Virus record (IMG/VR): IMGVR_UViG_3300033153_015063
Span: 62,001-126,000 of that record
Direction: 5' to 3' (one strand)
Length of the DNA stretch: 64,000 nucleotides
A model generated the notes under the pieces. That model worked only from the letters and a program-made list of their open reading frames with translations. It did not search any database and was not told where the DNA came from. Position numbers and translations under genes: made by a program. This document shows, piece by piece, positions 6,237 through 42,044 of the stretch (positions are counted from its first letter, which is position 1; every line of letters begins with the position of its first letter).

Positions 6237-8602
6237 CCATAGGCAGTCTGTCCAAAGCTCACATCACTTACAGGGTCAAAGACGCCCAACGCAGCAAATA
6301 CGAATAGCACCACTCCAAGGATTATTGGTATGAGTGCGATGTCGGAACCCTGGGAGTCACTCTTTGATACGAAGTACTGGAGACCAACTCCAACGAGTAG
6401 GAACATCAGTGCTATTGAAGTCCAGATGTGTTGGAGTATGAGGCCGAGGAATACCCCAAGTGCTATGATAACCCCACCTATGACAATGACACCAATGGTG
6501 AACAAATTGCCGGTCTCAGAAGTTTCCTCGATGTCGGTTTTACTCCTTATCAGGAATCCACCGAACACCACCCCAGCACCAGCTACTATGAAGTAGGCCT
6601 GGGTTCTACCCAGGCCCTCTGGCACGAAAGCCCTGATGACACCAAGTACGATGACGGCGACGACGCCTACCAATGCGGCCAGGCGGGCCCACTCATCTGT
6701 AGCCTTTGGTAGTTGAACGGGTAATACAAAGTAGATTACAATACCAGCGATGATACCAGCAATGAGTAGCCAATAGGTGTCAAAGAACGTTGATATGGTG
6801 CTGCGGGCTGTGACCACCTCGCCACCTTTGAAGCCCTCGAATATCTGCATGGAGAGTGCCCGGCCCGTGATTGTGTAGTCGCCTTCGCCAGTCGCCTCGA
6901 TGGTGAATTTTTTCGAATATTTGTTGTGGGTCCCATCATCATAGACATCCTCGTACACATCGGTCTCGACACTATCTTTCAACTCTACAGCACCTTCTAC
7001 CTCGTAGCTGAGAGAGATGCTTTCGTGATGCCCGATAACGGTGTAAGTGACAGTGATTTCTTTGGTGACATCCTGGACCATCTCAGATGGTGCAGAGATA
7101 ACAACGAGAATATCAGGGGCCTCCCGCTTGATGAAATACGACTTTGAATTTTTACCACCACCATCGTCATACACACTTATGCCGATACGTACCTCTGGTT
7201 CTGATTGGCAGGTCAGGGTTGCGGTCGCCTCACTACCAGACACACTCTGGGTGATTGCGGCCTGTTCATCACATATCAACTCTATTCTGGTCAAACTCTT
7301 TCCAGTATCGGGTTTAGCGGTGATGTCAAACCCTGAGTTGGTCCCTTCATTCGTGATAAGTGTGCCAAGAGTACCAACCAATATCGGTCTGTCCTGAAAG
7401 TAAGGCGGATGGTCCCACTCTATTGCCGTGATTGTGGGTTCAGAACCACTGGCCGATAGAACGGCCAGAGTTAATGTCTCGGTGACGGTCTGTACACCTG
7501 GTTCCGATGCCGTGATAGTCAAAGTGAGACTACCAGCCGAGGTTGGTAACCAATTGAACGTGAGTTTGTATATCTGCGTTCCAAGTGTTGCAACAGCCTT
7601 CAGATTGCTGATGGAAGAACCAAGACTGTCAGATGCAGACCAGTACGCCGAACAAGTTCCGTCACAGCTCATGTCGGTACTCAGAGAGTTGTGGAAGTTG
7701 ACCTCGACAGACCTGGTATTACCAGAGAACACGTCATAGTCCGTCCCAGGTTTCTGGCCGCTTGCCCACGAGAAGGTACCAACGTCAGAGGTCCGATGAA
7801 TTATAAGGTCATCTACCCAGGAATTTCCGAATCTGTAGTTTGTGTAGTGTTCTAGACCATACTTACTCATCTCGATTCCAATCTGCTTGATAGTGAAGCT
7901 ATGTGAGATTGTAGCGAGTCTCCGTCCGTTCAAGTCTACGCTGAAGGTTCCACTTGAGACCAATACCTGGATATGGTTCCAGTCACCAGCCACATTACCG
8001 CTACCATCTACGTTACCATTACCCCATTTCAGGGTGGTTTGAATACCCTGTATAACTTTTGTCTCAACTACATTATTATTTGTGTGGCTTCTGACAAAAA
8101 GATTAGAAGTTCCAAGATGACGGTAGAATCTAATACTTATCCCATCTTCGGGACTAGTGATACCAAAATTTGAAGGGCCAAGACCTTGCCTCAATTGATG
8201 TTCTTCAAAATAAACCCCAAACGTGTTGTCATGTACCTGACTCTGCCAGAGAAAGTATCCATCGAAGATAAATTCATCAGTGGCAGAAGCGGTGTTATAG
8301 TCAAAAACAGCGTCCACAATACCACCACATTCGATTGCGTTTTTGCCACTAAGACCAACACAAGGACTTGTGACAATGGCAATGTTATCGGTTCCACGAG
8401 ATGCCAGAGACGTAGTTCTCTCGATATAAGGGCCATACCCCTGAGAATCCGATTTGAAATCACCGTCGGTAGATACCCAGACCGTTGCTATTTCAGGGTT
8501 GCTGACCTGTCCATAGATGTTACAAAAACCCACCATGATGATGAGTATAACAACCATTCCAGCAATGTAGACTGGTTTTGTCAATTTACTCATATTATTC
8601 AC
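6230..8602 (-). CDS. surface protein with lectin/LamG-like and Ig-like regions and about 6 C-terminal TM helices
   Basis: N-terminal anchor; GDWNHIQV...VDLNG pattern; Ser/Thr-rich beta segments. Confidence 0.75.
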   Translation of the reverse strand: MNNMSKLTKPVYIAGMVVILIIMVGFCNIYGQVSNPEIATVWVSTDGDFKSDSQGYGPYIERTTSLASRGTDNIAIVTSPCVGLSGKNAIECGGIVDAVFDYNTASATDEFIFDGYFLWQSQVHDNTFGVYFEEHQLRQGLGPSNFGITSPEDGISIRFYRHLGTSNLFVRSHTNNNVVETKVIQGIQTTLKWGNGNVDGSGNVAGDWNHIQVLVSSGTFSVDLNGRRLATISHSFTIKQIGIEMSKYGLEHYTNYRFGNSWVDDLIIHRTSDVGTFSWASGQKPGTDYDVFSGNTRSVEVNFHNSLSTDMSCDGTCSAYWSASDSLGSSISNLKAVATLGTQIYKLTFNWLPTSAGSLTLTITASEPGVQTVTETLTLAVLSASGSEPTITAIEWDHPPYFQDRPILVGTLGTLITNEGTNSGFDITAKPDTGKSLTRIELICDEQAAITQSVSGSEATATLTCQSEPEVRIGISVYDDGGGKNSKSYFIKREAPDILVVISAPSEMVQDVTKEITVTYTVIGHHESISLSYEVEGAVELKDSVETDVYEDVYDDGTHNKYSKKFTIEATGEGDYTITGRALSMQIFEGFKGGEVVTARSTISTFFDTYWLLIAGIIAGIVIYFVLPVQLPKATDEWARLAALVGVVAVIVLGVIRAFVPEGLGRTQAYFIVAGAGVVFGGFLIRSKTDIEETSETGNLFTIGVIVIGGVIIALGVFLGLILQHIWTSIALMFLLVGVGLQYFVSKSDSQGSDIALIPIILGVVLFVFAALGVFDPVSDVSFGQTAYGW

Positions 8603-10743
8603 ACCCCCAACCTGATAGGAACAAAATAAGTATCTATCAATATAAATCCGACGATGATACCAGCCACCACTACCACCGTATATATGGTGAATCCTGCAAA
8701 CTGTTCTGGATACAGTTTAAGCAACCCGAAGAGTGTAATAGCAGCGATGATAACTCCTATCAGAACAGGGCCAAGGAATATCTCTGAAAGTGTTGTGGCA
8801 GCCCGATCCTCCTTCTCGGTTTTGATGACGAGTGCCAGGGTCTCAGTATCAGTGTTGCCGCTTTCGTCCTCGACAGAGAGAGATACCACGTAGTCTCCAG
8901 TGCCAAATTGGTGAGTGACTACCTCTCCATAGGAAAGATTGGTCCCGTCTCCGAAATCCCACTCATAGAGCTCAATGTTGTCCTCGGCGTCTATGGAGAG
9001 TGACGAGAAGGTAATTGTGCTGCCCACGATAGCAGTATAGCTTCGTCTTGGTTCGTCGGACGGAGTTATACTGGTGGTAATACCTATTTTTGCACTCGGT
9101 TCAGTGTCGATGAACTCGATAAAGATAGGTTGTGTAGTGTCGGTGATGTCGAACTCATCTCGGACGAAGAGAGTCACTCTGTATTCCCCGTAATGGGGAG
9201 CTCGGAAATCAAATACTGCTTCGGATGACGTCACGATGTTGCTGTCCTCATCAGTAAGAATCCATGCATATTCGAGTATGTTGTTATCTGCTGGGTCGCT
9301 GTCGCCATCATTATCGGAAGTGGAAAGAGACCCGTCCAGCTCCACAGGACCCAGACCATTGATGGGCGTGGTAACCTGTTTTATAACCGCTGTAGGACCA
9401 CCATCAACCACGACAATAGGGCGACTTCCCAGGCCAACGGTTTGGGTGTTGCTAACCTGCCCAGAATCGTCAGTTACCTCAGCGGTAGGATTAAAGTTCC
9501 TAGTCGATGTATAGATGTGGTGATAGATGTGGGGGATACCTTGAGACTGAGCAACGAGCTCATAATCATCCCAGACACCATCTCCCTCCCAATCCCACTT
9601 GATCGACACTACGTCCTGTATAATAGTGGCACCACTGATACCAGATGTCTCTCCATCTATAAAGATTGCCGAGAACACTATAGTATCATCCTTCAGAACG
9701 TATGTGATACCGATGTTTGTCGAGGTCACTGACGATGTTATAGAGAAATACACCGCAGGAGGTTTATTGATGTTGGGAGTATGCATTGGGGCAATATCTA
9801 TGGCCTGGTCACCACAACCTCCAGTCGAGATAATATAAGTTGTGTCTATAAAACCATCACCATTGGTATCAGAACCCTCGATTTCAGTCAGTCCATTCTT
9901 ACTCCAGTAATTACCCATCGGGGCTTCAAGGATAGTTATTATCTCGCCATCATCCTCTACATCTATGTCATCGACGACGCTGAAGGTCACTGTTCCCCAG
10001 CCAACACCACCGGATACTTCCTGGACATTGTTAATGAATCTATTATAAAAGAAGTTGAGATTTGTAGTTCCAGATGGATGAAAATCTCCAAGAGAAACAG
10101 CCTTGTTGCATCCTTCAATAGTATTATCCACGAAGTTGATGTCATTGGTACTTTCATCGAGTGAAATACACGATGATGATGCAGACGAGGACCCCATGAT
10201 TTCATTACTCATCACTGTAATAATAGTGTCGTCACCATAATCAGTGTATCTTATTTCGATGTTCTTTTCGCATTCGTAGAGAACGCTGTCACCAATATAG
10301 ACTTCGGTCTCGGCACCACCTTCGATTTTGATGCAGGTGGTTTGCTGGCTGATATCTGCATCGGTAATGGAACCCTTCGCACCTGCATTGAAGAGGATTC
10401 CGTCACCCCAATCTGATTGGTCAACACCAGGCACACCGGTGTCCTCGGCCCCGAAGGTTGCCCCACTACGGACTATCAACTCTCCGTTGACCTCGATATG
10501 GGCACCCTGCGAGATTACGACATGTGAACCCACAATCTCAAGGGACCCATCTATCATAAGGTCTGAAGAGACCAGGTAGACGTTGCCCTCCTCCCAGGTC
10601 CTATCATCTGTGATACTTGCCGGGGCCACGATAGTGGTGGTCTTGTAGACGTCGGTGGGGTCAGTGAGGTAGAAGGCTGCACCTACAAGGATTAAAGCCA
10701 TGATGAACATCAGCATCTTATTATTATCTGCCATTAAAGACAC
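8599..10743 (-). CDS. surface protein with NosD-like beta-helix and PKD domains
   Basis: GNYWS...DTNGDGFID, WDWEGDG and YEWDFGDG motifs; N-terminal anchor and two C-terminal TM helices. Confidence 0.8.
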   Translation of the reverse strand: MSLMADNNKMLMFIMALILVGAAFYLTDPTDVYKTTTIVAPASITDDRTWEEGNVYLVSSDLMIDGSLEIVGSHVVISQGAHIEVNGELIVRSGATFGAEDTGVPGVDQSDWGDGILFNAGAKGSITDADISQQTTCIKIEGGAETEVYIGDSVLYECEKNIEIRYTDYGDDTIITVMSNEIMGSSSASSSCISLDESTNDINFVDNTIEGCNKAVSLGDFHPSGTTNLNFFYNRFINNVQEVSGGVGWGTVTFSVVDDIDVEDDGEIITILEAPMGNYWSKNGLTEIEGSDTNGDGFIDTTYIISTGGCGDQAIDIAPMHTPNINKPPAVYFSITSSVTSTNIGITYVLKDDTIVFSAIFIDGETSGISGATIIQDVVSIKWDWEGDGVWDDYELVAQSQGIPHIYHHIYTSTRNFNPTAEVTDDSGQVSNTQTVGLGSRPIVVVDGGPTAVIKQVTTPINGLGPVELDGSLSTSDNDGDSDPADNNILEYAWILTDEDSNIVTSSEAVFDFRAPHYGEYRVTLFVRDEFDITDTTQPIFIEFIDTEPSAKIGITTSITPSDEPRRSYTAIVGSTITFSSLSIDAEDNIELYEWDFGDGTNLSYGEVVTHQFGTGDYVVSLSVEDESGNTDTETLALVIKTEKEDRAATTLSEIFLGPVLIGVIIAAITLFGLLKLYPEQFAGFTIYTVVVVAGIIVGFILIDTYFVPIRLGV

Positions 10744-10772: not shown

Positions 10773-10872
10773 GGGCAAAAGAGGGTTTCGAACCCTCACC
10801 TTCATCGGACCATATCGCCCCGGTAAAGGGGCCATGACCCTGATGATGTGCTTCCACTTACACTACATTGCC
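10773..10872 (-). ncRNA. tRNA-like RNA (100 nt) with an extended anticodon arm
   Basis: acceptor GGCAATG/TTTTGCC; D arm GTGT/GCAC with GG loop; stem TCATC/GATGA enclosing a 35-nt hairpin; T arm GAGGG-TTCGAAA-CCCTC. Confidence 0.7.
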
Positions 10873-10924
10873 AGTACAAAAGAGGGTTGGAAAAGAGGGT
10901 TGGAAGGGGGTGGAGGATTCGATC

Positions 10925-13900
10925 TCAGAACTCCATGTACTGACCGATGTCCCACGTCAGGTCGAACCAGAAGCTATGGATGAGAATGAACATCACCACC
11001 CACAGAAGATACACACCGATCAGTTTGAAGGACAGATCATAGACACCACCGAAACCAAGGGTGTCACCAAGGAATAACAGAGTCAGGATGGTGGCGATGA
11101 AGGCCAACAGGAACCACATGAACCATCCCTCGAAGATGAGTTCGTTATGGTCCTTGTCAACCTTTTCATCACTGACGACTGCGGTCACGTTCTGCACCTG
11201 GACCACCGTTACATGGGTCTTCTGGACGAGTATCTCAACGCTATCGGTGACGTCGGGGTCTGTATCACTCAAGCTGTCGGTAACATCTACGATAAGCGTA
11301 CAGGTCAGGTTGTCGATCTCGTCGTCGAGTGTGGGTGCTGTGTAGGTCCCCCATGCATCTGTGTCGAGGGCCTGCGAGACGCCGCCACAGTCGATAGTGC
11401 TGTTTTCTCCCTCGACGCTGAAGTCGTAGTAGAGGGTGTCTCCGTTGGCGTCGGTGGCCTGCACCATGAACTTCCCGGTTTCCTCAGGGGCAATAACCTC
11501 GTCGAAGGCAATGAACCTGATGATAATAGGTTCATACTCGGTCGTCCCTCCATCAGGCTGCACAATGATACAGTCGTCACAGACTGTGGTAGCGTCCTCA
11601 ACGATGTCAGTGCCAGCCGCTGAATGGTCTGTGGTGGTATGGTCCACCACAGTATCATCTACTTGTCCATCAGCACCATCGCTGTATCCGACAAGGTTGT
11701 TGTTATCCTTCAGAGACCATGTAGCATCAGTGACACCAAGACCGAAGTTCTCGTTGTTCTGGTTCTTGATATCCTCCTCGACTGTGTTGGAAGGTGCCGC
11801 CAGAACCTGGGTCTGGACCCCGAACTTGTCGTTGTTCTCGGCGTGGTTGTTCCAGATAGAGATGTCGTAGTCATCCACTACCAGTCCGAGGCTGGAGTAG
11901 ATAACCATCATAAACGCAGACCCACAGGACGAGTCAGCCAACCCGATGAGCTTGGTTCCCACAGGGGCACATGCTGCGGGGAGTGGTTCGGTCATATCTA
12001 TGACCTCATAGTTACTCATCTTGATGACATACTCATCGTTCATGTCCTCGGTCAACCAGAGATTCACCGAGTTACCTTCACCGCCACTCTGGGAAACGTT
12101 CTCGGAAAGAAGTGGTGCATTGAAGTTGACGATTCCGCTATCTACCTCGTTGAGAACGTTGTTGCTGAACATCGTAACATCAAACCCACAGTCAACTGGA
12201 GTAGGAAGCAATGGGCTACATGTCGTACTCTCGATGTTGAACAGGGCATTGCTTCGATGTGAGAAGTCGGTGTTGTTCACAGAGTAAGAGACTGTGTTGG
12301 GTCTGGTGGAAGGATTCCCGGTCATCAGTGCAACTGTGGATAGGGTCCCCCCAATATCGTCATTACCAGGAACTCCTGCCATGTTCATCAGGAACGGCAT
12401 ACCGTTATCTCCGGTCAATGGACCGATGACGCTGCCACCGTTGATTTCGAGGCTACCGAAGTTCCAGATGCCCATACCACCACCCTGGAAGGTGACCTTA
12501 CCGTGTGTCTGGTCACCGATGGCCTTGATAGTCCCATAGTTCTGGATAGTAACCACATCATCCACGTTATCGTGTTGGACAGTGGCACCACTCTCGATGT
12601 AAAGAGTATGTCCAGCGGGCACATAAACCCCCTGTGGACTGGGCGTCAATGGGTTGGTGTCAACGTAGTTGTCGAGGTCTCCAGTGTTGTCAGAATCGAC
12701 CACAGCAACAGTATCACCGTCGTAAGGATTGACCCACACAGCTCCCTCGTCCCGTTCCCAGATGAACACCCCGTACCACGGATGGTCCTGTTCTGGATGA
12801 CAGAACCAGTTTGCACCACGATAGTGGTCATGGGCCCATGCATAGAACTCCACGTTGTCGGGGTCGATGACACCAGTATCGAATGATACTTCCCAGAGGT
12901 TCGGGGTGTCGACGTTCTCGGCCATGTCCTCAACGTGCCATCCCTCGTCATACCGCTTCATCACCATGTCGACATAGGTAGGTACATCCACAAGCCAGTC
13001 ATGGACGGCGAAAGATGGATAGACCATCTTGAATGGTGGCATGACAGAGAGAGATGCACCATACTCGAACTGGAACCAGAAGCTATCTTCGTCAACGTCA
13101 TACCAGGTCCGGTCGATCAACGAGAGGTCGGTTCCAGAGAAGGGGATGGCCGCTTCGAACGAGCGAACATCGTTATCATGGTTACAAAGGTCGATGGTGC
13201 TGGCTGGCCCATAGTCTGTGAAACCAACTGCGAACTCGATGGTAGTGATGTCCTGATAAGGAGAACCACCGAGACCGCTTCCGACTGTATAGGTCAGGTA
13301 TTCATCATACACCCCGTCCATGTCGTAGTCAGAGTAGAGAGAGATGGTCTCGGTTCCATCGTCGATGTCGTTGCACATCACTCCGCCGAGATAGAGAAAC
13401 TCTGTGGACATATCAGCATAGGCGTAGAGATAGGTGTTGTCCTCAGTGTAGTAAGATGTCGGGGCATAGACACTATCCCAACCACCTTCCCGCTGCTTGA
13501 AGGTCTGGAGGTTCATCCAGTCCTCGGTAGTATCGAGCTCGCCATCGACTGTTGGAATGTCGAAAGAGTATGCTGGATGGATGCCACTGGTGGTGGCTGG
13601 GCTATCGGTCCAGGGGACCTGCCAGATATACGGATTATCCTCGGAAAGCTCATCGTAGGGCACGGCAACCAGGCGATCCTCATAACGATCTCGCCGCATC
13701 GAGGTCTCTGCGTTACCAAAGAGGGAAGGGACATTGATGGCCCCGGTCTCCTCGACACTATCATCGGTTTGATCCCTCCAGAAGAGTTTTATCTCCTTAA
13801 TCTGTTCATCATCTTCATCGTAGACCACGAAACTGGTGTCTACGATGGTTGTCTCCTCGACATAGGTATAGGAGTATTCCAGCATCCGGGGTAGGCCCTG

Positions 13901-15397
13901 GATTCCCACATCATCCCATGCGGGACCCTCGATCTTCGGGTTGACACGGGGGTCAGCTCCACCAGCAACCTGTTCGGCGAGATAAGGACGCTCAGCGGTC
14001 TCAATCTTACCAGCAGTACCAGTGGTGGCATCAGACCCGAAGTAGGTCACCATGTTCCCCTTGACGAAGTTCTCCTCAGGCTGAAGATTGTAGATGCTAC
14101 ACCGGTAGAGTCCGCCACTCGGTTCCTGCAAGTAGAACTGAAGATTCCACCATGCCTCGAAACCGTTGTCCTGGAGGTTGTTATGGAAAAGTATCGTGGA
14201 CATCTGACCGGCGACCCAGTCGAAGGGCTGTGGGATGAAGATATACCCAAAGCCCCAGTAATTAGTCGCAAGGTCATAGACCAACTGCCCATCCAACTTG
14301 ATGTCAACAACCCCGAAATCTCCGTTGTCGGAAATCTCGTTGTAACGGATGTTCGGGGAAGAATCAAAGATGTAAATTCCTGTGCAGATTCTTGGTGGGA
14401 AAGGGAATGGAATCTGCACCACGACATCTTCGGAAATACCCTCGATACCGTCCAGCCACCCGTCACCATCAGTGTCTACGTCGATGTCCGGGTCTGGATC
14501 TCTGATGAGGTCAAACCATGGGCTGACCTCGTCCATATTCCCGGTTATCTCATTGAGTTCGATGAGAGGAGAAGCTGGTCCATAGTGGTAGTACTCAGGG
14601 ATCTCTGGTTCTGGTTGGTAGGATGCCTCAGGGAATACATCAGCAGGCACCTCGTAGACACCACACATGAGATGGAAAGCGGGTATCGACGGTGCATTCA
14701 TGGCCAGACCAACCAGGATACCCGCACCGTTACCATGAATCCGAGAGTTGGAGATAGTAACGGTAGGGTGGTCCCTATCCATCGAACGACCACAGACCGA
14801 GATGCCTATATATGCATCAGTGACGTCGGCATGGTCTATGTGAACGATACGGTCAGAAAAGCCACCCATCCAACCTGGGTAGTGTTGGGCTGGAAGGATA
14901 TGGATTCCACCCCACAGTTCCTCCCAGTAGGGCGGATCGTCCACAAGAGAGTTCTGGTTCGTGAATCTGACCATACCCTCGTCATAGGTCCCACGCACGA
15001 TGATGGACCCATAGACGTAGATACCCACGTTGTAGGTTGTCCATGGGCTGGGGTCATCATAGTCACCGGGGATGTCATTGGGGCCATCAGGGTCCAACCA
15101 GTAATTGGCGTGTCCGCCACCACCGAGGGCACGGACCTCTACACCGGCCTCTATGACCAATGTCTTTTCTGGCGGGATGATGAGGTCCCCGTTCAGGAAG
15201 TATTCCCCTCTCTCCCAGTGTTCGTCAGAAGAAAGGATGTATGGAACACCAGCAGTCGATACATAGGTGACTTCCGTCTCTCCATCTTCGACAGAGGTTG
15301 AAAATCCAAGCTTCGGAGCGTTTACCCAGAGAACGGCCACAAGCAGGAACACTCCCACTACGGCCAGCGGTCTCTTGAGGTCCTCAAACATTACCAT
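10925..15397 (-). CDS. large acidic surface protein with beta-helix repeats and two C-terminal TM helices
   Basis: 1490-aa ORF; LVIEAGVEV, WGGI and SSPNIRYNEISDN patterns. Confidence 0.85.
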   Translation of the reverse strand: MVMFEDLKRPLAVVGVFLLVAVLWVNAPKLGFSTSVEDGETEVTYVSTAGVPYILSSDEHWERGEYFLNGDLIIPPEKTLVIEAGVEVRALGGGGHANYWLDPDGPNDIPGDYDDPSPWTTYNVGIYVYGSIIVRGTYDEGMVRFTNQNSLVDDPPYWEELWGGIHILPAQHYPGWMGGFSDRIVHIDHADVTDAYIGISVCGRSMDRDHPTVTISNSRIHGNGAGILVGLAMNAPSIPAFHLMCGVYEVPADVFPEASYQPEPEIPEYYHYGPASPLIELNEITGNMDEVSPWFDLIRDPDPDIDVDTDGDGWLDGIEGISEDVVVQIPFPFPPRICTGIYIFDSSPNIRYNEISDNGDFGVVDIKLDGQLVYDLATNYWGFGYIFIPQPFDWVAGQMSTILFHNNLQDNGFEAWWNLQFYLQEPSGGLYRCSIYNLQPEENFVKGNMVTYFGSDATTGTAGKIETAERPYLAEQVAGGADPRVNPKIEGPAWDDVGIQGLPRMLEYSYTYVEETTIVDTSFVVYDEDDEQIKEIKLFWRDQTDDSVEETGAINVPSLFGNAETSMRRDRYEDRLVAVPYDELSEDNPYIWQVPWTDSPATTSGIHPAYSFDIPTVDGELDTTEDWMNLQTFKQREGGWDSVYAPTSYYTEDNTYLYAYADMSTEFLYLGGVMCNDIDDGTETISLYSDYDMDGVYDEYLTYTVGSGLGGSPYQDITTIEFAVGFTDYGPASTIDLCNHDNDVRSFEAAIPFSGTDLSLIDRTWYDVDEDSFWFQFEYGASLSVMPPFKMVYPSFAVHDWLVDVPTYVDMVMKRYDEGWHVEDMAENVDTPNLWEVSFDTGVIDPDNVEFYAWAHDHYRGANWFCHPEQDHPWYGVFIWERDEGAVWVNPYDGDTVAVVDSDNTGDLDNYVDTNPLTPSPQGVYVPAGHTLYIESGATVQHDNVDDVVTIQNYGTIKAIGDQTHGKVTFQGGGMGIWNFGSLEINGGSVIGPLTGDNGMPFLMNMAGVPGNDDIGGTLSTVALMTGNPSTRPNTVSYSVNNTDFSHRSNALFNIESTTCSPLLPTPVDCGFDVTMFSNNVLNEVDSGIVNFNAPLLSENVSQSGGEGNSVNLWLTEDMNDEYVIKMSNYEVIDMTEPLPAACAPVGTKLIGLADSSCGSAFMMVIYSSLGLVVDDYDISIWNNHAENNDKFGVQTQVLAAPSNTVEEDIKNQNNENFGLGVTDATWSLKDNNNLVGYSDGADGQVDDTVVDHTTTDHSAAGTDIVEDATTVCDDCIIVQPDGGTTEYEPIIIRFIAFDEVIAPEETGKFMVQATDANGDTLYYDFSVEGENSTIDCGGVSQALDTDAWGTYTAPTLDDEIDNLTCTLIVDVTDSLSDTDPDVTDSVEILVQKTHVTVVQVQNVTAVVSDEKVDKDHNELIFEGWFMWFLLAFIATILTLLFLGDTLGFGGVYDLSFKLIGVYLLWVVMFILIHSFWFDLTWDIGQYMEF

Positions 15398-26470: not shown

Positions 26471-27985
26471 ATGTTAGGTTTCAATATCGAGGACCGTGAG
26501 GGCCAGTTTAAACTAATGGCTATACTTGGCTCGATGGCACTCATCCTGGCGAGTGCCTTCTACTACCTTCCTGGTATCGTTTACGAACCCTATACCGTCA
26601 AGGGTAAAATCAAGAAACATGATGGTGGAGGTGACATCAAAACCCTGGATGTGAGGGTCACCAACCTCGACACAGGTGAGTATCTCGAATCTGATACTTC
26701 AGATAAGGGCAAGTGGCAGGTCAATCTCGGCAACCTACCATCTGGTTACGATTGGGGAGATGTCATCAGGGCGGAGATTGTAGGAAGTGAGTATCGGGCT
26801 GAAGAAAATCACACCCTACAATCTGGAGAAACACAGAAAGACTTTGGTGATATGACCCCGAACATGCAACCAGTCGCTGACATCGTTGGAACCGATAGGT
26901 CTGCTGATAAGAATGACCAGGTTGACCTCAGCGGGGGTGACTCCTTCGACAATGATACTAACCCGGTGGACACTCTTACCTACAAGTGGGACTACGATGA
27001 CAGCGACGGCCTCGATTGGGACAACCCAGATGACACTGGACTGACAACTTCGTTCGTGGCAACATCGACAGTCACAGTAACATTACAGGTAGATGATAAC
27101 ACAGGTCTGGACTATGACACCGATACCGATTCTATAGTTGTCACCATCAGCAACCAGGCACCTACTGTTGTAGGAATCACCCACGACCAGAGTGGCGACC
27201 CAGACCCGACAGACAATGTAGAGTACACCTGTGATGCTACTGACCCGGATGAGGATTCACTTCAGTATAGATGGGACTGGAACAACGACGCCTCATGGGA
27301 CACATCCTATACATCCTCGAACTCGTCTTCAACCACCTTCGCATCTGGAACCCATACACCAAAGTGTCAGGCATATGATGGATACTTGACGGACTCTGAG
27401 GTGGATACCTCTACCCTCTACGTCAATTATACCTACACATTCACTCTACACTCAGGGTGGACACCTTTCGCTATGTTGTTCAACGATGGTAGATACAACA
27501 ATGCATCTTCACTCATGGATGATGAATCGTTGAATCTCCATGACGACAGTGGTATCATCTACTGGGACTACGTAGGCCAGAACTATAGCGATGGATACTT
27601 CACCAACTGGTCTGAGGCAGGAGACGACGAAGACTTCAACTTTGTACGGGGAAATACCTACTTCATCAACAATCCGGGGCTCAACAAAACCATCGTCATC
27701 AAAGGTCGTCTATGGGCTGACAGGGCCCTATCCTTCACTTCTGGTTGGTACTATCTCCCCTATGCAGGTGTCGAAAAGACTGTAGCAAACCACTACGAGA
27801 CCCTACTTCCATCATCACTCACAGAGGCTATGCTTATCGACCACAATGACCAGTGGTTCTCGACATCTTATATCTCTGGATTCCATGACGCAGGGTCCGA
27901 TGAGAACTTCGCCCTGACCACTGGGGTGTTTGTTCTGATAAACTTCGATTCATCGGATAGTTACACTTGGAGGTATCAGACATGA
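26471..27985 (+). CDS. surface protein with an N-terminal beta-sandwich and PKD domains
   Basis: YKWDYDD and YRWDWNND motifs; [10 protein letters not shown] shared with the next gene. Confidence 0.8.
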   Translation: MLGFNIEDREGQFKLMAILGSMALILASAFYYLPGIVYEPYTVKGKIKKHDGGGDIKTLDVRVTNLDTGEYLESDTSDKGKWQVNLGNLPSGYDWGDVIRAEIVGSEYRAEENHTLQSGETQKDFGDMTPNMQPVADIVGTDRSADKNDQVDLSGGDSFDNDTNPVDTLTYKWDYDDSDGLDWDNPDDTGLTTSFVATSTVTVTLQVDDNTGLDYDTDTDSIVVTISNQAPTVVGITHDQSGDPDPTDNVEYTCDATDPDEDSLQYRWDWNNDASWDTSYTSSNSSSTTFASGTHTPKCQAYDGYLTDSEVDTSTLYVNYTYTFTLHSGWTPFAMLFNDGRYNNASSLMDDESLNLHDDSGIIYWDYVGQNYSDGYFTNWSEAGDDEDFNFVRGNTYFINNPGLNKTIVIKGRLWADRALSFTSGWYYLPYAGVEKTVANHYETLLPSSLTEAMLIDHNDQWFSTSYISGFHDAGSDENFALTTGVFVLINFDSSDSYTWRYQT

Positions 27986-29346
27986 AAAAAGTCTCTATCT
28001 TCCTCTTACTGAGTTCAGTAGTGTTACTCTCGATGCTGGGAACTGTTGCGTCTTTCAACCCATCTTACACAGTCTATGGGGTTATCGAGACGGTAGAAGG
28101 TAACCCTATCCAGGATGCAAGTGTCACGGTGACAAACACTGATACAAACGAGAGTCTGAATACTACCACAGGTAGTGAGGGGAAGTATCAGGTCAACCTC
28201 GGTAACCTTCCATCAGGATGGTCGATAGGCGATACCATCGACATCGAGGTATCTTTTGATGATGTCACTGTAAACGACAACTTCACCACATCTGGAAACA
28301 GAAAGATGGTGGACTTCGAGTTGACCTTCTCAGACCCGGTGGCAATCATCATCTTCACCCCCGAGACCGTCTTTGTGGGTGATGTTGTCGAGTTCGACGG
28401 GTCATCATCATGGTCTAACGGCACCATTACCAACTGGAACTGGATTTTCGGCGACGATGATGCCGATGGAGGTGTGGATGTAACACACGTCTATGATGAA
28501 GCGGGTGTATACGAGGTCAGCCTGGCGATTGTAGATAACTACACGATGGCCGATACTCACTCTATCAACATCACAGTTTTGGAACCGTTCTGGAGTGGTT
28601 CAGCGTCATACGAAGTCAGACAGGGTGTCGATAGATGGATTGACATCTCTGAAAACCTGGTCTCTGATGCTTCTGTCGAATGTGCCGATAGTAGAGTGTC
28701 CTTTGTAGTAGAAAACAGTACATTGTTGTTGTCTTTCAACGCCGGAGATACCAACACTACATTACAACTTTCCATCACCAAGGAATATATTGTATACCAA
28801 CACTACATTACAATCGTAGTAGTAGAGGTATTCAGTGCTACATTATCCGCCAGTAACATCAACTCGTCAGGATTGATAGAGATTGAACTCTCAATTAACG
28901 GTGGAAAAACGCCTTATAGTATCGTGTGGGATTGGGGCGACGGAAATTACACGAACCTCACTACAAACCTGATCGAACTATCTTCCACTCACAACTACTC
29001 ATCTGTTGGTAACTATTCTATAGTATCCACAGTCACGGATGATGATGAATATAGTGTTATCAACGAGTATACTATAACCTTTGCCGATGAGGATGAAGAC
29101 GATGATAGTGCAGGCAACACAGCTACAGTGCTTACTGAGAACCAGAAAAAACAGGTAAGTGCTGTAACTATTACTGCTCTTGAAGTAGTTTTAGTCCTCT
29201 TTATGACTGTTTTCCTTTTCATGGTAGTTTCTAAAGTTGTAGAAATGAATACAACTAAGCTTGTGTTTATTCTACTGATTATCAGTGGGGCTATCTCTCT
29301 TTTATATGGTTGGATTGACCTATTCAGATTATTGGCATGGTGGTAA
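27982..29346 (+). CDS. surface protein with PKD domains and two C-terminal TM helices
   Basis: GGAGGT RBS; signal peptide; WIFGDD and WDWGDG motifs. Confidence 0.8.
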
Positions 29347-32300
29347 AAATGGATTTAAAAGACAAACCTATGCTACTCAGTGTAATGCTGGTCATCGGCA
29401 TCTTCGCTGTCGGTGGAGTTCTATGGTATAGCGGTTACTTTACAGTAGTTGTAGAACCATATCCTGTAACTATCCACTCGGATAGTCTCGATGATCTCTC
29501 AGGTCATCTGAACCTTGAGGTCACTGACGAAGTAGACGACTACGACGACGATGGATGGTCATACGGTGACGAGGAAACCGATGAGTTGGGGAGTGGCTGG
29601 GCTGAGATACCAACGGCCCAACCAATCTCGGCATCCTTCTCGGTTTATGTCCGAGACTGGGGGGAGAAAGAACCCGATAACGATGGTGGGGTAGTTCATC
29701 ACAACCCATCGTTTGCCTTTTTTCTTTCAACAGCCGATACCCTGACCCTTGACGAAACCAATGGTGTCGAGGTAATCTCTCTCGGAGACTTCTACATCTT
29801 CGTCGGTCTGGTATGGGAGAACAAACACGACAGGTACAAAGTAGAGTTTGGTTGTATGGAGAACAAACTCCACCACAAACATCCTGGTCAGATGGATGCC
29901 CTCGATGACTGGCATGTCGTAGATATTATCTACGACGGAAATTATGCCTACCTCAATCTGGAAGAACGAGACCAGAAAGGTAAAGGGTGGAAACATGGCC
30001 TGTTCAGGTTGGACTGTAAGGTAGAAACTACTATCAGCTCAGTAGGGTTTGAGTTCAACAAGAACCACTTTCTCGATGGAATAACCCTGACTGACGATGG
30101 AGAAGGTTCAGAACCTTTCGTTGATGCTGGTGAGGATTTTGATGCCATAGAGGATGTCTCCTTTGATGTTTCGGGTGATTATGGACATATGCCTACCGAT
30201 GTTGATGGAGTCTGGTGGGACATGGATGACAGCGACGGTACCGACGACCGGGATATCGCCACCAGGGATGGTTCATGGGTCTACGGGGACCCAGGGATTT
30301 ACACCGCTACGTTCTGCGTCGAGCTTGACGATGCTTCTCTCTATTGTGATAGTATCGAAATAGAGGTCGAGGCGATCTATCCTGACACCGATGGAGATGG
30401 TATCACTGACCCAGACGACAACTGCCCATCAATCCCCAACCCTGGGCAAGAGGATAATGACCTGGACGGCCTGGGTGATGTCTGTGACCCCGACGATGAT
30501 AACGACGGCGTTCTTGACACTACAGACAACTGCCAGTTCATCTGGAACCCACTCCAGGCCGACAACGACCTGGATGGTCTGGGTGACGTCTGCGATGACG
30601 ACGACGACAACGATGGCATCCTTGATACTGTCGACAACTGTCAATACACCTACAATCCCTTGCAAACAGACATTGATAGCGATGGAGAGGGTGACGCTTG
30701 TGATGGAGACCTCGATGGTGATGGGGTTCCCAACACATCTGACAACTGCCCATCAATCCCCAACCCTGGGCAAGAGGATAATGACCTGGACGGCCTGGGT
30801 GATGTCTGTGACCCCGACGACGATGATGATGGAGTTCTGGATGGGCCAGACAACTGCCAATATGTAGCAAACCCCCTACAAACAGACACCGATGCAGATG
30901 GACTTGGAGATGCATGTGACCCTGACGACGATAACGACGGTGAACCCGACACTACGGATAACTGCCAACTCATCTACAACCCAGACCAGATTGATACCGA
31001 TAGTGATGGTCTGGGTGATGTCTGTGACCCTGATGATGATGATGATACAATCCTGGACCCCGTTGACAACTGCCCTTTGACAGCAAACTTGGGGCAGGAA
31101 GATAACGATGCCGATGGGATAGGGGACGTGTGTGACCCCGACGATGATAACGACGGTGTGTTGGATGGGCCAGACAACTGCCAATACACTCCAAACCCAT
31201 CTCAACTCGATACTGACAGCGATGGGGAGGGTGACGCCTGTGACACCGACGACGATGGAGACGGTGTGTTGGATGGTCCAGACAACTGCCCGTTGACGCC
31301 GAACCCAGGACAGGATGATACTGATGGAGACAGCCTTGGAGACCTGTGCGATCCTGACGACGACAACGACGGCGTTCTTGACTGGGCCGACAACTGCCAG
31401 TATGTCGTGAATCCATCCCAGGCCGACAACGACGGAGATTCACTCGGTGATGCCTGTGACCCTGATGATGATGATGATGGTGTTCTCGATGGGGCCGACA
31501 ACTGCCCCTTCACCCCCAACCCAGGACAGGAAGACCTGGACTCCGACGGCCATGGTGACGCCTGTGATGATGATTGGGACGGCGACGGTATTGATAACGG
31601 GGATGATAACTGCCCAATCGTCCCCAACCCGGGGCAGGAAGACGCTGACGAGGATGGGGTCGGCGATGCCTGTGAGGATGATACCGACGGTGATGGTATC
31701 CCTGACCCCCTGGATAACTGTGTGTTGACGCCTAACCCCGACCAGACTGACACGGACGGGGACGGTGACGGGGACGCTTGCGACACCGACGACGACGACG
31801 ATACAATCCTGGACCCAGACGACAACTGCCCCCTTATCCCCAATCCAGGGCAGGAGGACAACGACCTGGATGGTCTGGGTGATGTCTGTGACCCGGACGA
31901 CGACAACGACGAGATAGACGACCCAGAAGATAATTGCCCTCTGGTCACAAATCCAGGACAGGAGGACCTGGACGAGGACGGGGTCGGTGACGTCTGTGAT
32001 GACGACGATGATGGTGATGGTATCTCTGATGAAGATGATAACTGCCCGACCATCCAGAACCCTTCTCAGACTGACACTGACGTAGATGGAATCGGTGATG
32101 CCTGCGACAGCGATGATGATGGCGATGGTGTTCCTGATACTACAGATAACTGCCCCTTGACCCCGAACAGCGACCAGGCTGACACGGATGGGGATGGTAT
32201 AGGCGATGCCTGTGAGGAACCCATCACAATCATACTCTTTGACATCTCTGACAACGTCACCTACATCGTCAATACAAGGGTGAACTTCTCTGGAGTGATT

Positions 32301-32729
32301 ATCTCTCCAGAGGACTGTTCGTTCTTATGGGAGTTTGGTGACGACAGAACGGCAAATGTCAAGGGCCCGAGTCACATCTGGTTATGGCTTGGGGAGTTCC
32401 AGATGAACATCACCGTGACCTGCGACCTGGACGAGGAGAAGAAGGTTGTCAACGTGACTATCGTTGAATCTGCACCTGGTCCTGCTGGCAAGGCCGAGGT
32501 GGTGTCAAAGATGGAATATCCGTTGACATACTTCCTTGTGCCGTTCCTCGTGTTATTCGGTCTCGGACTGTTTGTGTTCCAGGCCCCGACGTTGGTAGAT
32601 AACCAGAAGTACGTCATGGCCGTTATGTTGGGCATCATAGCGATAATGATGTTCGAGTTCTTCGGCATCACCAGCTACTCTGTCAACTTTGGGGCGATCT
32701 ACTCTGGCATGGGAGTTACACCGAGGTGA
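29337..32729 (+). CDS. surface protein with PKD domains and 17 thrombospondin type 3 repeats
   Basis: 17 units of DNCP..PNP.Q.D.D.DG.GD.CD; N-terminal anchor; two C-terminal TM helices. Confidence 0.9.
30380..32216 (+). repeat. 17 x 108-bp coding repeat (thrombospondin type 3)
   Basis: counted DNC motifs; units 1 and 4 share about 80 identical bp. Confidence 0.85.
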
Positions 32730-41968: not shown

Positions 41969-42044
41969 AGGCGGGTAGCGGATTCGAACCGCTGTGGTCT
42001 CTACAGGTGATGTATGATATGAGACACACCTCCATCGACCCACC
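41969..42044 (-). ncRNA. 76-nt tRNA-like RNA lacking a D-stem, with an anti-RBS loop
   Basis: acceptor GGTGGGT/ACCCGCC; stem GTCTC/GAGAC around loop ATATCATACATCACCTGTA; T arm AGCGG-TTCGAAT-CCGCT. Confidence 0.7.

What the first reader, a model, noticed from the sequence alone, without database searches (positions are those of the whole stretch)
10773..10872. tRNA-like RNA with an elongated anticodon arm inside the surface-protein operon
Seen: normal D and T arms and an imperfect acceptor stem, but the anticodon loop is replaced by a 35-nt extension (GGGUCAU/AUGGUCC then GCCCC-UUUACC-GGGGC) with no U33 at the usual place. I cannot place a bulge-helix-bulge splice motif. Two 8-nt pieces are complementary to leader-module mRNA (CCAUGACC and AAGGGGCC), but they are paired in the hairpin and could be chance. 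Inference: a tRNA mimic, decoy or mRNA processing signal.
Basis: partly seen in the sequence, partly recalled or inferred. Interest (0 to 1): 0.6.

Follow-up and report, generated by a model that had tools for sequence, protein, structure and literature searches.

The report
Viral tRNA gene with hairpin-blocked anticodon
A large archaeal virus carries a genuine tRNA-shaped gene, derived from a threonine tRNA, whose anticodon loop is replaced by a long hairpin that lacks the usual archaeal splice signal, so it probably cannot decode and is either a tRNA-like processing element or a disabled tRNA.

Summary
On the minus strand, 10872 to 10773, lies a 100-nt cloverleaf. Rfam's tRNA model scores it 37.5 bits (cut-off 29), with 35 nt where the 7-nt anticodon loop belongs.

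The window comes from a complete 242.6-kb virus, apparently of an archaeon. Its tRNA-Met has a textbook bulge-helix-bulge (BHB) intron, so a host splicing system is used. The candidate's insertion has no BHB or relaxed half-motif for any cut that leaves a 7-nt loop. It extends the anticodon stem into an 18-bp arm. Removing 28 nt would give loop AUGGUCC or AGGGUCC, with C at position 37, where tRNAs almost always have a purine.

The gene sits 52 nt after one large gene and 38 nt before the next, with no recognisable promoter or terminator.

- **Most likely (0.5):** an unspliced, non-decoding tRNA-like RNA cut out by RNase P and tRNase Z. Whether that is useful or mere decay is open.
- **Rival (0.27):** a spliced tRNA-Thr.
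- **Weak lead:** the virus encodes a Ro60-like protein, but the GGUCCGA link to it did not survive testing.
- **Leader-mRNA complementarity:** near chance.

No relatives were found, so covariation could not be tested.

The parts
10773..10872 (-). Whole tRNA-like gene (100 nt): acceptor 5' strand 10866-10872, D arm 10848-10863, T arm 10781-10797, acceptor 3' strand 10774-10780, discriminator C 10773. No encoded CCA.
   Evidence: RF00005 37.5 bits, model positions 1-71. ARAGORN -i calls tRNA-Thr(GGU). The minimum-energy fold is this cloverleaf.
10802..10846 (-). Extended anticodon arm (45 nt). Stem UCAUC/GAUGA (10842-10846 / 10802-10806) plus 35 nt (10807-10841) in place of a 7-nt loop. Total 18 bp, with bulged A32 (10841), bulge G57 A58 (10815-10816) and apical loop UUUACC (10822-10827).
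   Evidence: -21.3 kcal/mol, z -2.55. The opposite strand folds 2.4 kcal/mol worse.
10814..10841 (-). The 28 nt that ARAGORN treats as an intron (between positions 31 and 32). A cut shifted by one base gives the same product. No bulge-helix-bulge motif is present.
10805..10811 (-). GGUCCGA heptamer on the 3' strand of the arm. It equals anticodon GGU + C37 C38 + G39 A40 of the notional mature tRNA, and is identical to the motif contacted by Xenopus Ro60 in Y RNAs.
   Evidence: Sequence; (30 copies in the genome, about 35 expected); PMC4201824.
10873..10924 (-). 52-nt spacer between the TGA stop of the 1490-aa ORF and the tRNA 5' end. It consists of three fragments resembling tRNA 3' ends: 10901-10924 (T loop, T stem, 7-nt acceptor strand, U, CCA), 10888-10900 and 10877-10887. 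The last two repeat the candidate's own ACCCUCUUUU.
   Evidence: AACCCTCTTTTG occurs three times within 130 nt.
10925..15397 (-). Upstream ORF on the same strand, 1490 aa, 7.4% Thr. No family match.
8599..10743 (-). Downstream ORF on the same strand, 711-714 aa. The likely ATG is at 10734, after GGUG. It has an N-terminal hydrophobic segment and PKD-type domains, and is 10.1% Thr.

Best explanation
This is a real tRNA-type gene of an archaeal virus, derived from a tRNA-Thr(GGU). A 28-nt insertion has converted its anticodon loop into a continuous 18-bp hairpin arm.

The insertion carries no archaeal splice signal. The RNA therefore most likely stays unspliced and cannot decode.

It is probably transcribed as part of the message that runs from the 1490-aa gene into the 714-aa gene (inferred). 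Its intact acceptor/T-arm/D-arm body would let host RNase P and tRNase Z cut it out. That cut would separate the two cistrons. The virus's own CCA-adding enzyme could then add CCA. All three steps are inferred from what these enzymes are known to recognise.

The product would be a stable, roughly 100-nt tRNA-shaped RNA with an over-long arm. Whether the virus benefits from it, as a processing signal or a tRNA mimic, or whether it is a tRNA gene disabled by a palindromic insertion, cannot be decided from one sequence.
For: **Shown**
- The tRNA body scores 37.5 bits against RF00005, with all tertiary-contact bases present.
- 35 nt replace the loop and pair into an extended helix.
- No BHB, hBH or HBh' motif exists for any splice pair that leaves a 7-nt loop. 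tRNA-Met of the same genome shows a perfect motif: H1 CUCA / H2 UGAG, bulges UA|A and AC|A, and a 5-bp outer helix.
- The bulges that are present (A32; G57 A58) lie 5' of the intervening helix on each strand. That mirrors the BHB layout. They are separated by 8 bp rather than 4.
- The only possible 7-nt loops are AUGGUCC and AGGGUCC, both with C37 (sequence).
- The virus has no EndA gene, but does have a class II CCA-adding enzyme.
- The gene lies 52 nt after a stop codon and 38 nt before the next start on the same strand. I saw no TATA-like box in the 130 nt upstream and no oligo-T downstream. Genuine promoters in this genome carry a clear TTTAAATA box.
- A second tRNA-like RNA with an intact body and an aberrant anticodon region exists at L006:16182-16278.

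**From established knowledge**
- RNase P, tRNase Z and CCA-adding enzymes recognise the acceptor/T-arm half of tRNA and do not need the anticodon arm.
- YrlA from M. smegmatis is cut by RNase P and receives CCA (PMC4201824 and 10.1101/312249).
Against: - There is no expression or processing data, and no sequencing run was listed.
- No relative was found, so there is no covariation or conservation evidence.
- ARAGORN accepts it as an intron-bearing tRNA-Thr.
- ACC and ACU make up 59% of the virus's Thr codons, and the flanking genes are Thr-rich (7.4-10.1% against 5.8%). A working tRNA-Thr(GGU) here would make biological sense.
- The host is unknown. It might have a broad-specificity endonuclease (the alpha2beta2 or epsilon2 type).
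- The spacer upstream is made of tRNA 3'-end scraps. That fits a decaying locus as well as a functional one.
Confidence: 0.5

Rival explanations
1. It is a working intron-containing tRNA-Thr(GGU). The host endonuclease removes the 28 nt despite the atypical structure, a ligase joins the halves, and the tRNA supplies ACC/ACU decoding for the Thr-rich genes around it.
For: - ARAGORN -i calls tRNA-Thr(GGU) with a 28-nt intron.
- The length and the hairpin form are typical of archaeal introns.
- The virus clearly relies on host splicing for tRNA-Met.
- It would be the virus's only Thr tRNA.
- ACC is the commonest Thr codon and the neighbouring genes are Thr-rich.
- Both notional splice junctions (31|32 and 59|60) fall beside bulges.
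- Another tRNA of this virus, Pro UGG, also has a pyrimidine at position 37 and still scores 46 bits.
Against: - No BHB or relaxed half-motif exists for any cut that leaves a 7-nt loop.
- The bulge arrangement is mirrored relative to a BHB and spaced by 8 bp.
- The product would carry C37, so it could not receive t6A37, which ANN-decoding tRNAs normally carry (own knowledge).
- The acceptor stem has a U.U mismatch and a G.U pair.
Confidence: 0.27
2. It is a dead relic. A viral tRNA gene was disabled by a quasi-palindromic insertion, namely an inverted copy of its own anticodon loop plus a small hairpin. It has no function and is not yet eroded.
For: - GGGUCAU is an imperfect inverted copy of the loop AUGGUCC, as template switching would produce.
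- The 52 nt upstream are scraps of tRNA 3' ends.
- Several of this virus's tRNAs carry defects: a mismatch in the tRNA-Met acceptor stem, and G33/U37 in tRNA-Pro.
- No relative conserves the element.
Against: - The body keeps every tertiary-contact base and scores above the Rfam cut-off.
- Three G.U pairs in the predicted arm (two within the inverted repeat, plus G40.U59) are compatible only with the tRNA-sense strand, though the energy advantage is small.
- Even a relic with this body would still be cut by RNase P and tRNase Z if transcribed, so this reading overlaps with the best explanation.
Confidence: 0.15
3. It is a ligand of the virus's Ro60-like (TROVE) protein: a non-permuted tRNA-shaped Y RNA. 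The GGUCCGA-bearing bulged helix would sit where YrlA RNAs carry their Ro60-binding stem.
For: - The virus encodes a TROVE protein: phrog_850 2e-52; PDB 9L5Y/9KOP 1.3e-29; Rsr 2NVO 2e-4.
- The exact GGUCCGA lies on the strand equivalent to the 5' strand of a YrlA stem (PMC4201824 and 10.1101/312249).
- The chance of the heptamer occurring anywhere in 100 nt is about 0.7%.
Against: - The gene is 100 kb from the TROVE gene.
- The RNAs that actually flank TROVE genes in this virus (four copies) and in 5 of 5 relatives fetched share a different motif, GUGUAG..CGGNUACUUC. The candidate lacks it.
- GGUCCGA is absent from those five loci.
- Three of the seven bases are simply the anticodon.
- The bulge is on the opposite strand from that in vertebrate Y RNAs.
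- There is no match to Rfam Y_RNA or YrlA.
Confidence: 0.05
4. It is an antisense regulator on a tRNA scaffold. The segment GGUCAUGGCCCCUU would pair with the start-codon region (CCAUGACC) and with AAGGGGCC of a multi-copy 'leader-module' gene family.
For: - Both 8-mers occur in at least 3 of 7 family members.
- CCAUGACC spans the start codon of these apparently leaderless genes.
Against: - Each match is exactly 8 nt and does not extend.
- Both segments are paired inside the arm.
- 1.5% of shuffled inserts do as well, before correcting for the choice of target.
- The duplex energy is unremarkable: 22% of shuffles are as good.
- The excess of these 8-mers in the window merely reflects paralogy.
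Confidence: 0.03

Closest known systems
Archaeal intron-containing pre-tRNAs (bulge-helix-bulge introns, canonical 37/38 or non-canonical positions)
   Same: A tRNA body with a short (28-nt) insertion in the anticodon loop that folds as an extension of the anticodon stem. The genome is archaeal-type, and its tRNA-Met has a canonical BHB intron.
   Different: There are no two 3-nt bulges around a 4-bp helix and no relaxed half-motif. The bulges are 1 and 2 nt, 8 bp apart, and on the mirrored side of the helix. The product would have C37.
YrlA-type bacterial and phage Y RNAs (tRNA-mimicking Ro60 partners)
   Same: An L-shape-competent T/D/acceptor core with a long helix in place of the anticodon stem-loop. 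A TROVE gene and a CCA-adding enzyme are in the same genome. A GGUCCGA heptamer lies on the equivalent strand.
   Different: The element is not circularly permuted: its ends are at the acceptor stem and the arm is closed by a loop. It is not adjacent to the TROVE gene. It lacks the motif shared by the TROVE-adjacent RNAs of this clade, and has no Rfam match.
tRNA-like processing elements (mascRNA from MALAT1; tRNA-like elements of Haloferax volcanii; tRNAs embedded in phage and bacterial operons)
   Same: A tRNA-shaped module inside a longer transcript. RNase P and tRNase Z can excise it whatever the anticodon arm looks like.
   Different: Processing has not been shown here. The mascRNA model scores only 16 bits against a cut-off of 42.5.
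Degenerate or pseudo-tRNA genes in large phage genomes
   Same: A solitary viral tRNA gene with acceptor-stem mismatches and a non-standard anticodon loop, surrounded by tRNA fragments.
   Different: The defect is an ordered 18-bp helix, not scattered decay. The rest of the molecule is intact.

Membership tests
tRNA (Rfam RF00005) | Cloverleaf body with conserved D-loop/T-loop tertiary bases, scoring above the gathering threshold | tested here: met
   37.5 bits against a cut-off of 29, model positions 1-71. U8, A14, G18, G19, A21, G53, U54, U55, C56, A58 and C61 are all present.
tRNA (Rfam RF00005) | 7-nt anticodon loop with U33 and a purine at position 37 | tested here: not met
   The gene has 35 nt there. 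After removing 28 nt the only possible loops are AUGGUCC (U33, C37) or AGGGUCC (G33, C37) (sequence).
tRNA (Rfam RF00005) | 7-bp acceptor stem | tested here: inconclusive
   Five Watson-Crick pairs plus U6.U94 (position 6:67 in standard numbering) and G7.U93 (7:66). The fold pairs only five. Other tRNAs of this virus also carry mismatches in the acceptor stem.
Archaeal BHB-intron pre-tRNA | Two 3-nt bulges on opposite strands separated by a 4-bp helix, with splice sites after the second bulge base | tested here: not met
   An exhaustive scan of all splice pairs found no 4/4 central helix for any pair that yields a tRNA. tRNA-Met of the same genome passes as a control.
Archaeal BHB-intron pre-tRNA | Relaxed hBH or HBh' half-motif at each splice site | tested here: not met
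   For 5' exon ends at 31-37 with an intron of exactly 28 nt, the central helix has at most 3 of 4 pairs and neither flanking helix reaches 2 bp (hand check). The nearest BHB-like pairs give 6- or 8-nt loops.
Archaeal BHB-intron pre-tRNA | A spliced product exists | not testable with these tools
   No sequencing run was listed for this stretch.
Archaeal BHB-intron pre-tRNA | A splicing endonuclease is available | tested here: inconclusive
   The virus has no EndA. The host is unidentified, but the BHB intron in tRNA-Met implies a host enzyme.
Y RNA / YrlA (Ro60 ligands) | A Ro60/TROVE protein is encoded in the same genome | tested here: met
   L006:12573-14225(-): phrog_850 2e-52; PDB 9L5Y 1.3e-29; Pfam TROVE plus vWA_Ro60.
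Y RNA / YrlA (Ro60 ligands) | Encoded next to the TROVE gene | tested here: not met
   The candidate is at genome position 72.8 kb and the TROVE gene at 172.6-174.2 kb.
Y RNA / YrlA (Ro60 ligands) | Match to Rfam Y_RNA or YrlA, or to the clade's own motif CGGNUACUUC | tested here: not met
   RF00019 and RF02553 give no hit at the candidate. The motif is absent from the candidate and its 60-nt flanks, whereas four copies stand upstream of the TROVE gene and it occurs in 5 of 5 relatives.
Y RNA / YrlA (Ro60 ligands) | Ro60-contact motif (GGUCCGA, or GNCGAAN0-1G) in a helix at the anticodon-stem position | tested here: inconclusive
   The exact GGUCCGA lies at 10805-10811(-). The genome holds 30 copies against about 35 expected, and 0 of 5 related TROVE loci have it.
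tRNA-like processing element (RNase P / tRNase Z substrate inside an mRNA) | Intact acceptor/T-arm minihelix and elbow | tested here: met
tRNA-like processing element (RNase P / tRNase Z substrate inside an mRNA) | Co-transcribed with flanking cistrons and cleaved in vivo | not testable with these tools
   Only indirect evidence: same strand, gaps of 52 and 38 nt, no TATA box or oligo-T seen.

The most novel reading that the evidence does not exclude
The RNA is never spliced. It serves the virus's own RNA-handling set (a Ro60-like TROVE protein, a CCA-adding enzyme and a cluster of Y-like RNAs) as a non-permuted, tRNA-shaped Y RNA. Its GGUCCGA-bearing bulged arm would be the Ro60 docking site. 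That would make it the unpermuted counterpart of YrlA, and the first Ro60 partner proposed for an archaeal virus.
Probability: 0.06. Interest if true: 0.8.

Novelty: new variant of a known kind. Interest (0 to 1): 0.38.

Why it matters
If the RNA is unspliced yet retained, it would show an archaeal virus using a tRNA body for something other than decoding, such as punctuating an operon or mimicking tRNA.

If it is spliced, it would be an archaeal-type tRNA intron removed without a bulge-helix-bulge motif. That would widen the known substrate range of the splicing endonuclease.

Either outcome is directly testable with one Northern blot or small-RNA library.

On present evidence this is a single, unconserved instance and may simply be a disabled gene.

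The more solid by-product is the genome context. This is a complete 243-kb archaeal-type virus with a BHB-intron tRNA, a Ro60 homologue flanked by a conserved family of Y-like RNAs, and its own CCA-adding enzyme.

Tried and rejected
**Searches for relatives**
- The flanking 714-aa protein in viral contigs: none. In the 5.8-billion-protein set: only itself plus weak PKD-domain hits.
- PolB alone, then a PolB alignment, in viral contigs: only relatives at 25-29% identity.
- The 57-58% PolB relatives sit on JGI contigs that could not be searched whole and are not collinear with this genome.

**DNA pattern scans for the element**
- The insert with its stem in viral contigs: 0 hits.
- D arm plus T loop in metagenomes: 0 hits.
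- GGTCCGA plus this T arm in metagenomes: 11 unrelated hits.
- GGTCCGA plus a generic T loop in viral contigs: 118 hits, mostly ordinary Pro, Gln, Ser and Leu tRNAs or coding DNA. One lies inside a YrlA-like RNA beside a TROVE gene.

**Other attempts**
- Sequencing runs: none was listed.
- Host identification: the TopA search gave 43% identity to an unnamed archaeon, then about 34% to DPANN archaea and Thermococci. Five of those genomes hold no similar tRNA.
- Homology between the candidate locus and the tRNA/Y-like array near the TROVE gene: local alignment scores fall within the shuffle range.
- A shared ACCGGGG..UAUGGU with the second odd tRNA-like, and a shared GCCCC/GGGGC-GAUA hairpin with a Y-like RNA of L221: both judged to be chance.
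- The weak YrlA model hit at genome 165464-165563 (19 bits) spans two adjacent tRNAs, which is a known false-positive type.
- Alternative anticodon loops hidden in the insert (CUUUACC, GUCAUGG and others): none is closed by a 5-bp stem.

Full report
**1. The observation**

The feature lies on the minus strand, 10872 to 10773. It has the full anatomy of a tRNA except for the anticodon loop:
- a 7-position acceptor stem (five Watson-Crick pairs, then U.U and G.U);
- a D arm GUGU/AAGUGGAA/GCAC;
- a perfect 5-bp anticodon stem UCAUC/GAUGA;
- a 4-nt variable region;
- a T arm GAGGG/UUCGAAA/CCCUC;
- discriminator C, with no encoded CCA.

Rfam's tRNA model matches it end to end at 37.5 bits (cut-off 29; E 2.5e-7 for the whole genome). 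It treats the 35 nt between the anticodon-stem strands as a local end. The isolated 100 nt folds into this cloverleaf as its minimum-energy structure (-40 kcal/mol, z -2.6).

The arm is 5 bp, bulged A32, 8 bp, a 2-nt bulge G57 A58, 5 bp, and loop UUUACC (-21.3 kcal/mol, z -2.55). Default ARAGORN and the whole-window Rfam scan missed it. ARAGORN does not look for introns by default, and the Rfam miss was due to its speed filters.

**2. The genome**

The window is part of a single 242,596-bp virus record with direct terminal repeats, rated complete. Several lines point to an archaeal host:
- Its family B DNA polymerase is closest, at about 30% identity, to those of Halorubrum tailed viruses.
- Its topoisomerase I exceeds the cut-off of an archaeal-type NCBIfam model. 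Its nearest relative among species genomes is an uncultured archaeon at 43% identity, followed by DPANN archaea and Thermococci at about 34%.
- A multi-copy gene family has a TTTAAATA box about 30 nt before a start codon, as in leaderless archaeal genes.
- Its tRNA-Met carries a 92-nt intron at position 37/38 with a textbook bulge-helix-bulge motif.

The host lineage remains open.

**3. Is the insertion an intron?**

I derived the BHB geometry from the literature (PMC4090602) and confirmed it on tRNA-Met: central helix CUCA/UGAG, bulges UA|A and AC|A, and the anticodon stem as outer helix.

I then enumerated every possible splice pair in the candidate. No pair with a 4/4 central helix yields a tRNA. 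For the seven cuts that leave a 7-nt loop, the central helix has at most 3 of 4 pairs and neither flanking helix reaches 2 bp.

The bulges that do exist (A32 on the 5' strand, G57 A58 on the 3' strand) lie 5' of the intervening helix on each strand. That is the mirror of a BHB. They are also 8 bp apart rather than 4. The virus has no endonuclease of its own.

**4. What splicing would give**

GGUC occurs on both sides of the insert. Every 28-nt deletion therefore gives anticodon GGU, with loop AUGGUCC or AGGGUCC. Both put C at position 37, where tRNAs almost always have a purine and ANN-decoders carry t6A (own knowledge).

In favour of a real tRNA-Thr:
- ACC and ACU make up 59% of the virus's Thr codons.
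- The flanking genes are Thr-rich (7.4-10.1% against 5.8% genome-wide).
- It would be the virus's only Thr tRNA.
- A second tRNA of this virus (Pro UGG) also has G33 and U37.

**5. Local context**

The gene starts 52 nt after the TGA stop of a 1490-aa ORF. It ends 38 nt before the likely ATG of a PKD-domain protein with an N-terminal hydrophobic segment. All three are on the same strand. I saw no TATA-like box upstream and no oligo-T downstream, so co-transcription and excision by RNase P and tRNase Z is the natural inference.

The 52-nt spacer is built from three fragments resembling tRNA 3' ends, two of which repeat the candidate's own ACCCUCUUUU. This suggests past recombination or decay at the locus.

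**6. The Ro60 lead**

The virus encodes a TROVE/Ro60 homologue. Its best solved relative is the Ro60 of Thermus phage phiLo, which binds phage-encoded Y-like RNAs. It also encodes a class II CCA-adding enzyme.

Bacterial YrlA RNAs mimic tRNA and carry the Ro60-binding stem where the anticodon stem would be. The candidate's arm contains the exact heptamer GGUCCGA, which Xenopus Ro60 contacts, on the equivalent strand.

I tested this lead and it did not hold up:
- The heptamer is not enriched in the genome (30 copies, about 35 expected).
- Three of its seven bases are the anticodon.
- The RNAs that actually flank the TROVE gene share a different motif, GUGCUGUAGA..CGGNUACUUC. There are four copies within 800 nt in this virus, and the motif occurs in 5 of 5 distant relatives fetched.
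- The candidate lacks that motif and lies 100 kb away.
- The Rfam Y_RNA and YrlA models do not match it.

I keep this reading only as a low-probability novel case.

**7. The leader-module complementarity**

CCAUGACC and AAGGGGCC are over-represented in the window: 13 copies each against 3.7 and 1.5 expected. The reason is that they belong to the conserved start region of a paralogous gene family of at least 7 members.

The matches to the candidate are exactly 8 nt each and sit inside its helix. About 1.5% of shuffled inserts match two such words. The best duplex energy is ordinary. I regard this as chance.

**8. Relatives**

None could be found for the element or its neighbouring genes. No sequencing run was listed. 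Covariation and expression therefore could not be assessed.

**9. Verdict**

The thing is real and is a tRNA-Thr-derived gene of an archaeal virus. I put the readings as follows:
- About 0.5: it is not spliced and yields a non-decoding tRNA-shaped RNA cut from the operon transcript, with function open.
- 0.27: it is a spliced tRNA-Thr.
- 0.15: it is an inert relic.
- The remainder: the Ro60-ligand and antisense ideas.

It is a new variant of known kinds, of moderate interest, and resolvable with a single RNA experiment.

Noticed in passing
L006:12573-14225 (-), genome 172573-174225; outside the window: The virus encodes a TROVE/Ro60 homologue of 550 aa. Hits: phrog_850 2e-52; PDB 9L5Y/9KOP (Thermus phage phiLo Ro60) 1.3e-29; Pfam TROVE plus vWA_Ro60. 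Its closest relatives, at 64-66% identity, lie on short metagenome contigs.
   Followed up: partly
L006:15760-16700 (-), genome about 175.76-176.70 kb: Four copies of GUGCUG(U/A)AGA..CGGNUACUUC lie within 800 nt upstream of the TROVE gene, interleaved with tRNA-Lys, tRNA-Ala and tRNA-like RNAs. Two units carry a circularly permuted tRNA-like module: T arm, closed acceptor, D arm. The same motif stands next to TROVE genes in 5 of 5 distant relatives (L206, L218-L221). This looks like an undescribed clade of Y-like RNAs.
   Followed up: partly
L006:16182-16278 (-): A second tRNA-like RNA (RF00005 44.9 bits) has an intact acceptor, D and T arms, but 36 nt in place of 11 positions of the anticodon arm. 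ARAGORN's call of 'Ser(GGA) with a 5-nt intron' is doubtful.
   Followed up: partly
L006:5517-5683 (-): tRNA-Met(CAU) has a 92-nt intron at position 37/38 with a canonical hBHBh' motif. A virus-borne archaeal-type intron implies dependence on the host splicing endonuclease.
   Followed up: yes
L006:5438-5508 (-) and L009:6378-6522 (-): tRNA-Pro(UGG) has the anticodon loop UGUGGUU (G33, U37). tRNA-Ser(UGA) has a roughly 54-nt insertion whose boundaries, as called by ARAGORN, do not form a clean BHB. A BHB-like motif with long flanking helices lies further 3', at tRNA index 65/119.
   Followed up: partly
L003:11972-13297 (+) and L003:13294-14109 (+): A class II (bacterial-type, HD-domain) CCA-adding enzyme is followed by a small RelA/SpoT-like synthetase-domain protein.
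   Followed up: partly
window 24547, 61806; genome 15119, 57059, 57932, 129673, 211568: A paralogous gene family of at least 7 members shares a conserved promoter (CTTTAAATACTCC about 30 nt upstream), an apparently leaderless start CCATGACC, and the N-terminus MTVVEIPPGSGNRY.
   Followed up: partly
window 10877-10924 (-): The spacer upstream of the candidate consists of three fragments resembling tRNA 3' ends. The first ends in a 7-nt acceptor strand, U, then CCA. AACCCTCTTTTG occurs three times within 130 nt.
   Followed up: partly
window about 41970-42010 (-), genome 103988: An isolated T-arm-like hairpin (AGCGG UUCGAAU CCGCU) is preceded by CUGUAGAGACCAC and followed by a small closed stem. 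It may be another permuted tRNA-like module. A similar one lies at genome 30370 (-).
   Followed up: no
window 27967-32729 (+): A 459-aa protein carries a PamR-like (pilus RbmA-like) domain. It is followed by a 1130-aa protein made of many thrombospondin-type-3/Omp28-like repeats (NCBIfam MtsC 1e-208 over 6 stretches).
   Followed up: no
L173 and L203 (IMG/VR contigs): Two related viral contigs carry AUGGUCCGAUG followed by a T arm, inside a short tRNA-like element with a closed GUUCCCC/GGGGAAC stem. No TROVE gene was found in the stretch held.
   Followed up: no
whole window: Method note: the Rfam gathering scan of the full 64 kb and default ARAGORN both returned nothing. The same Rfam model scores the element 37.5 bits when its filters are relaxed.
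   Followed up: yes
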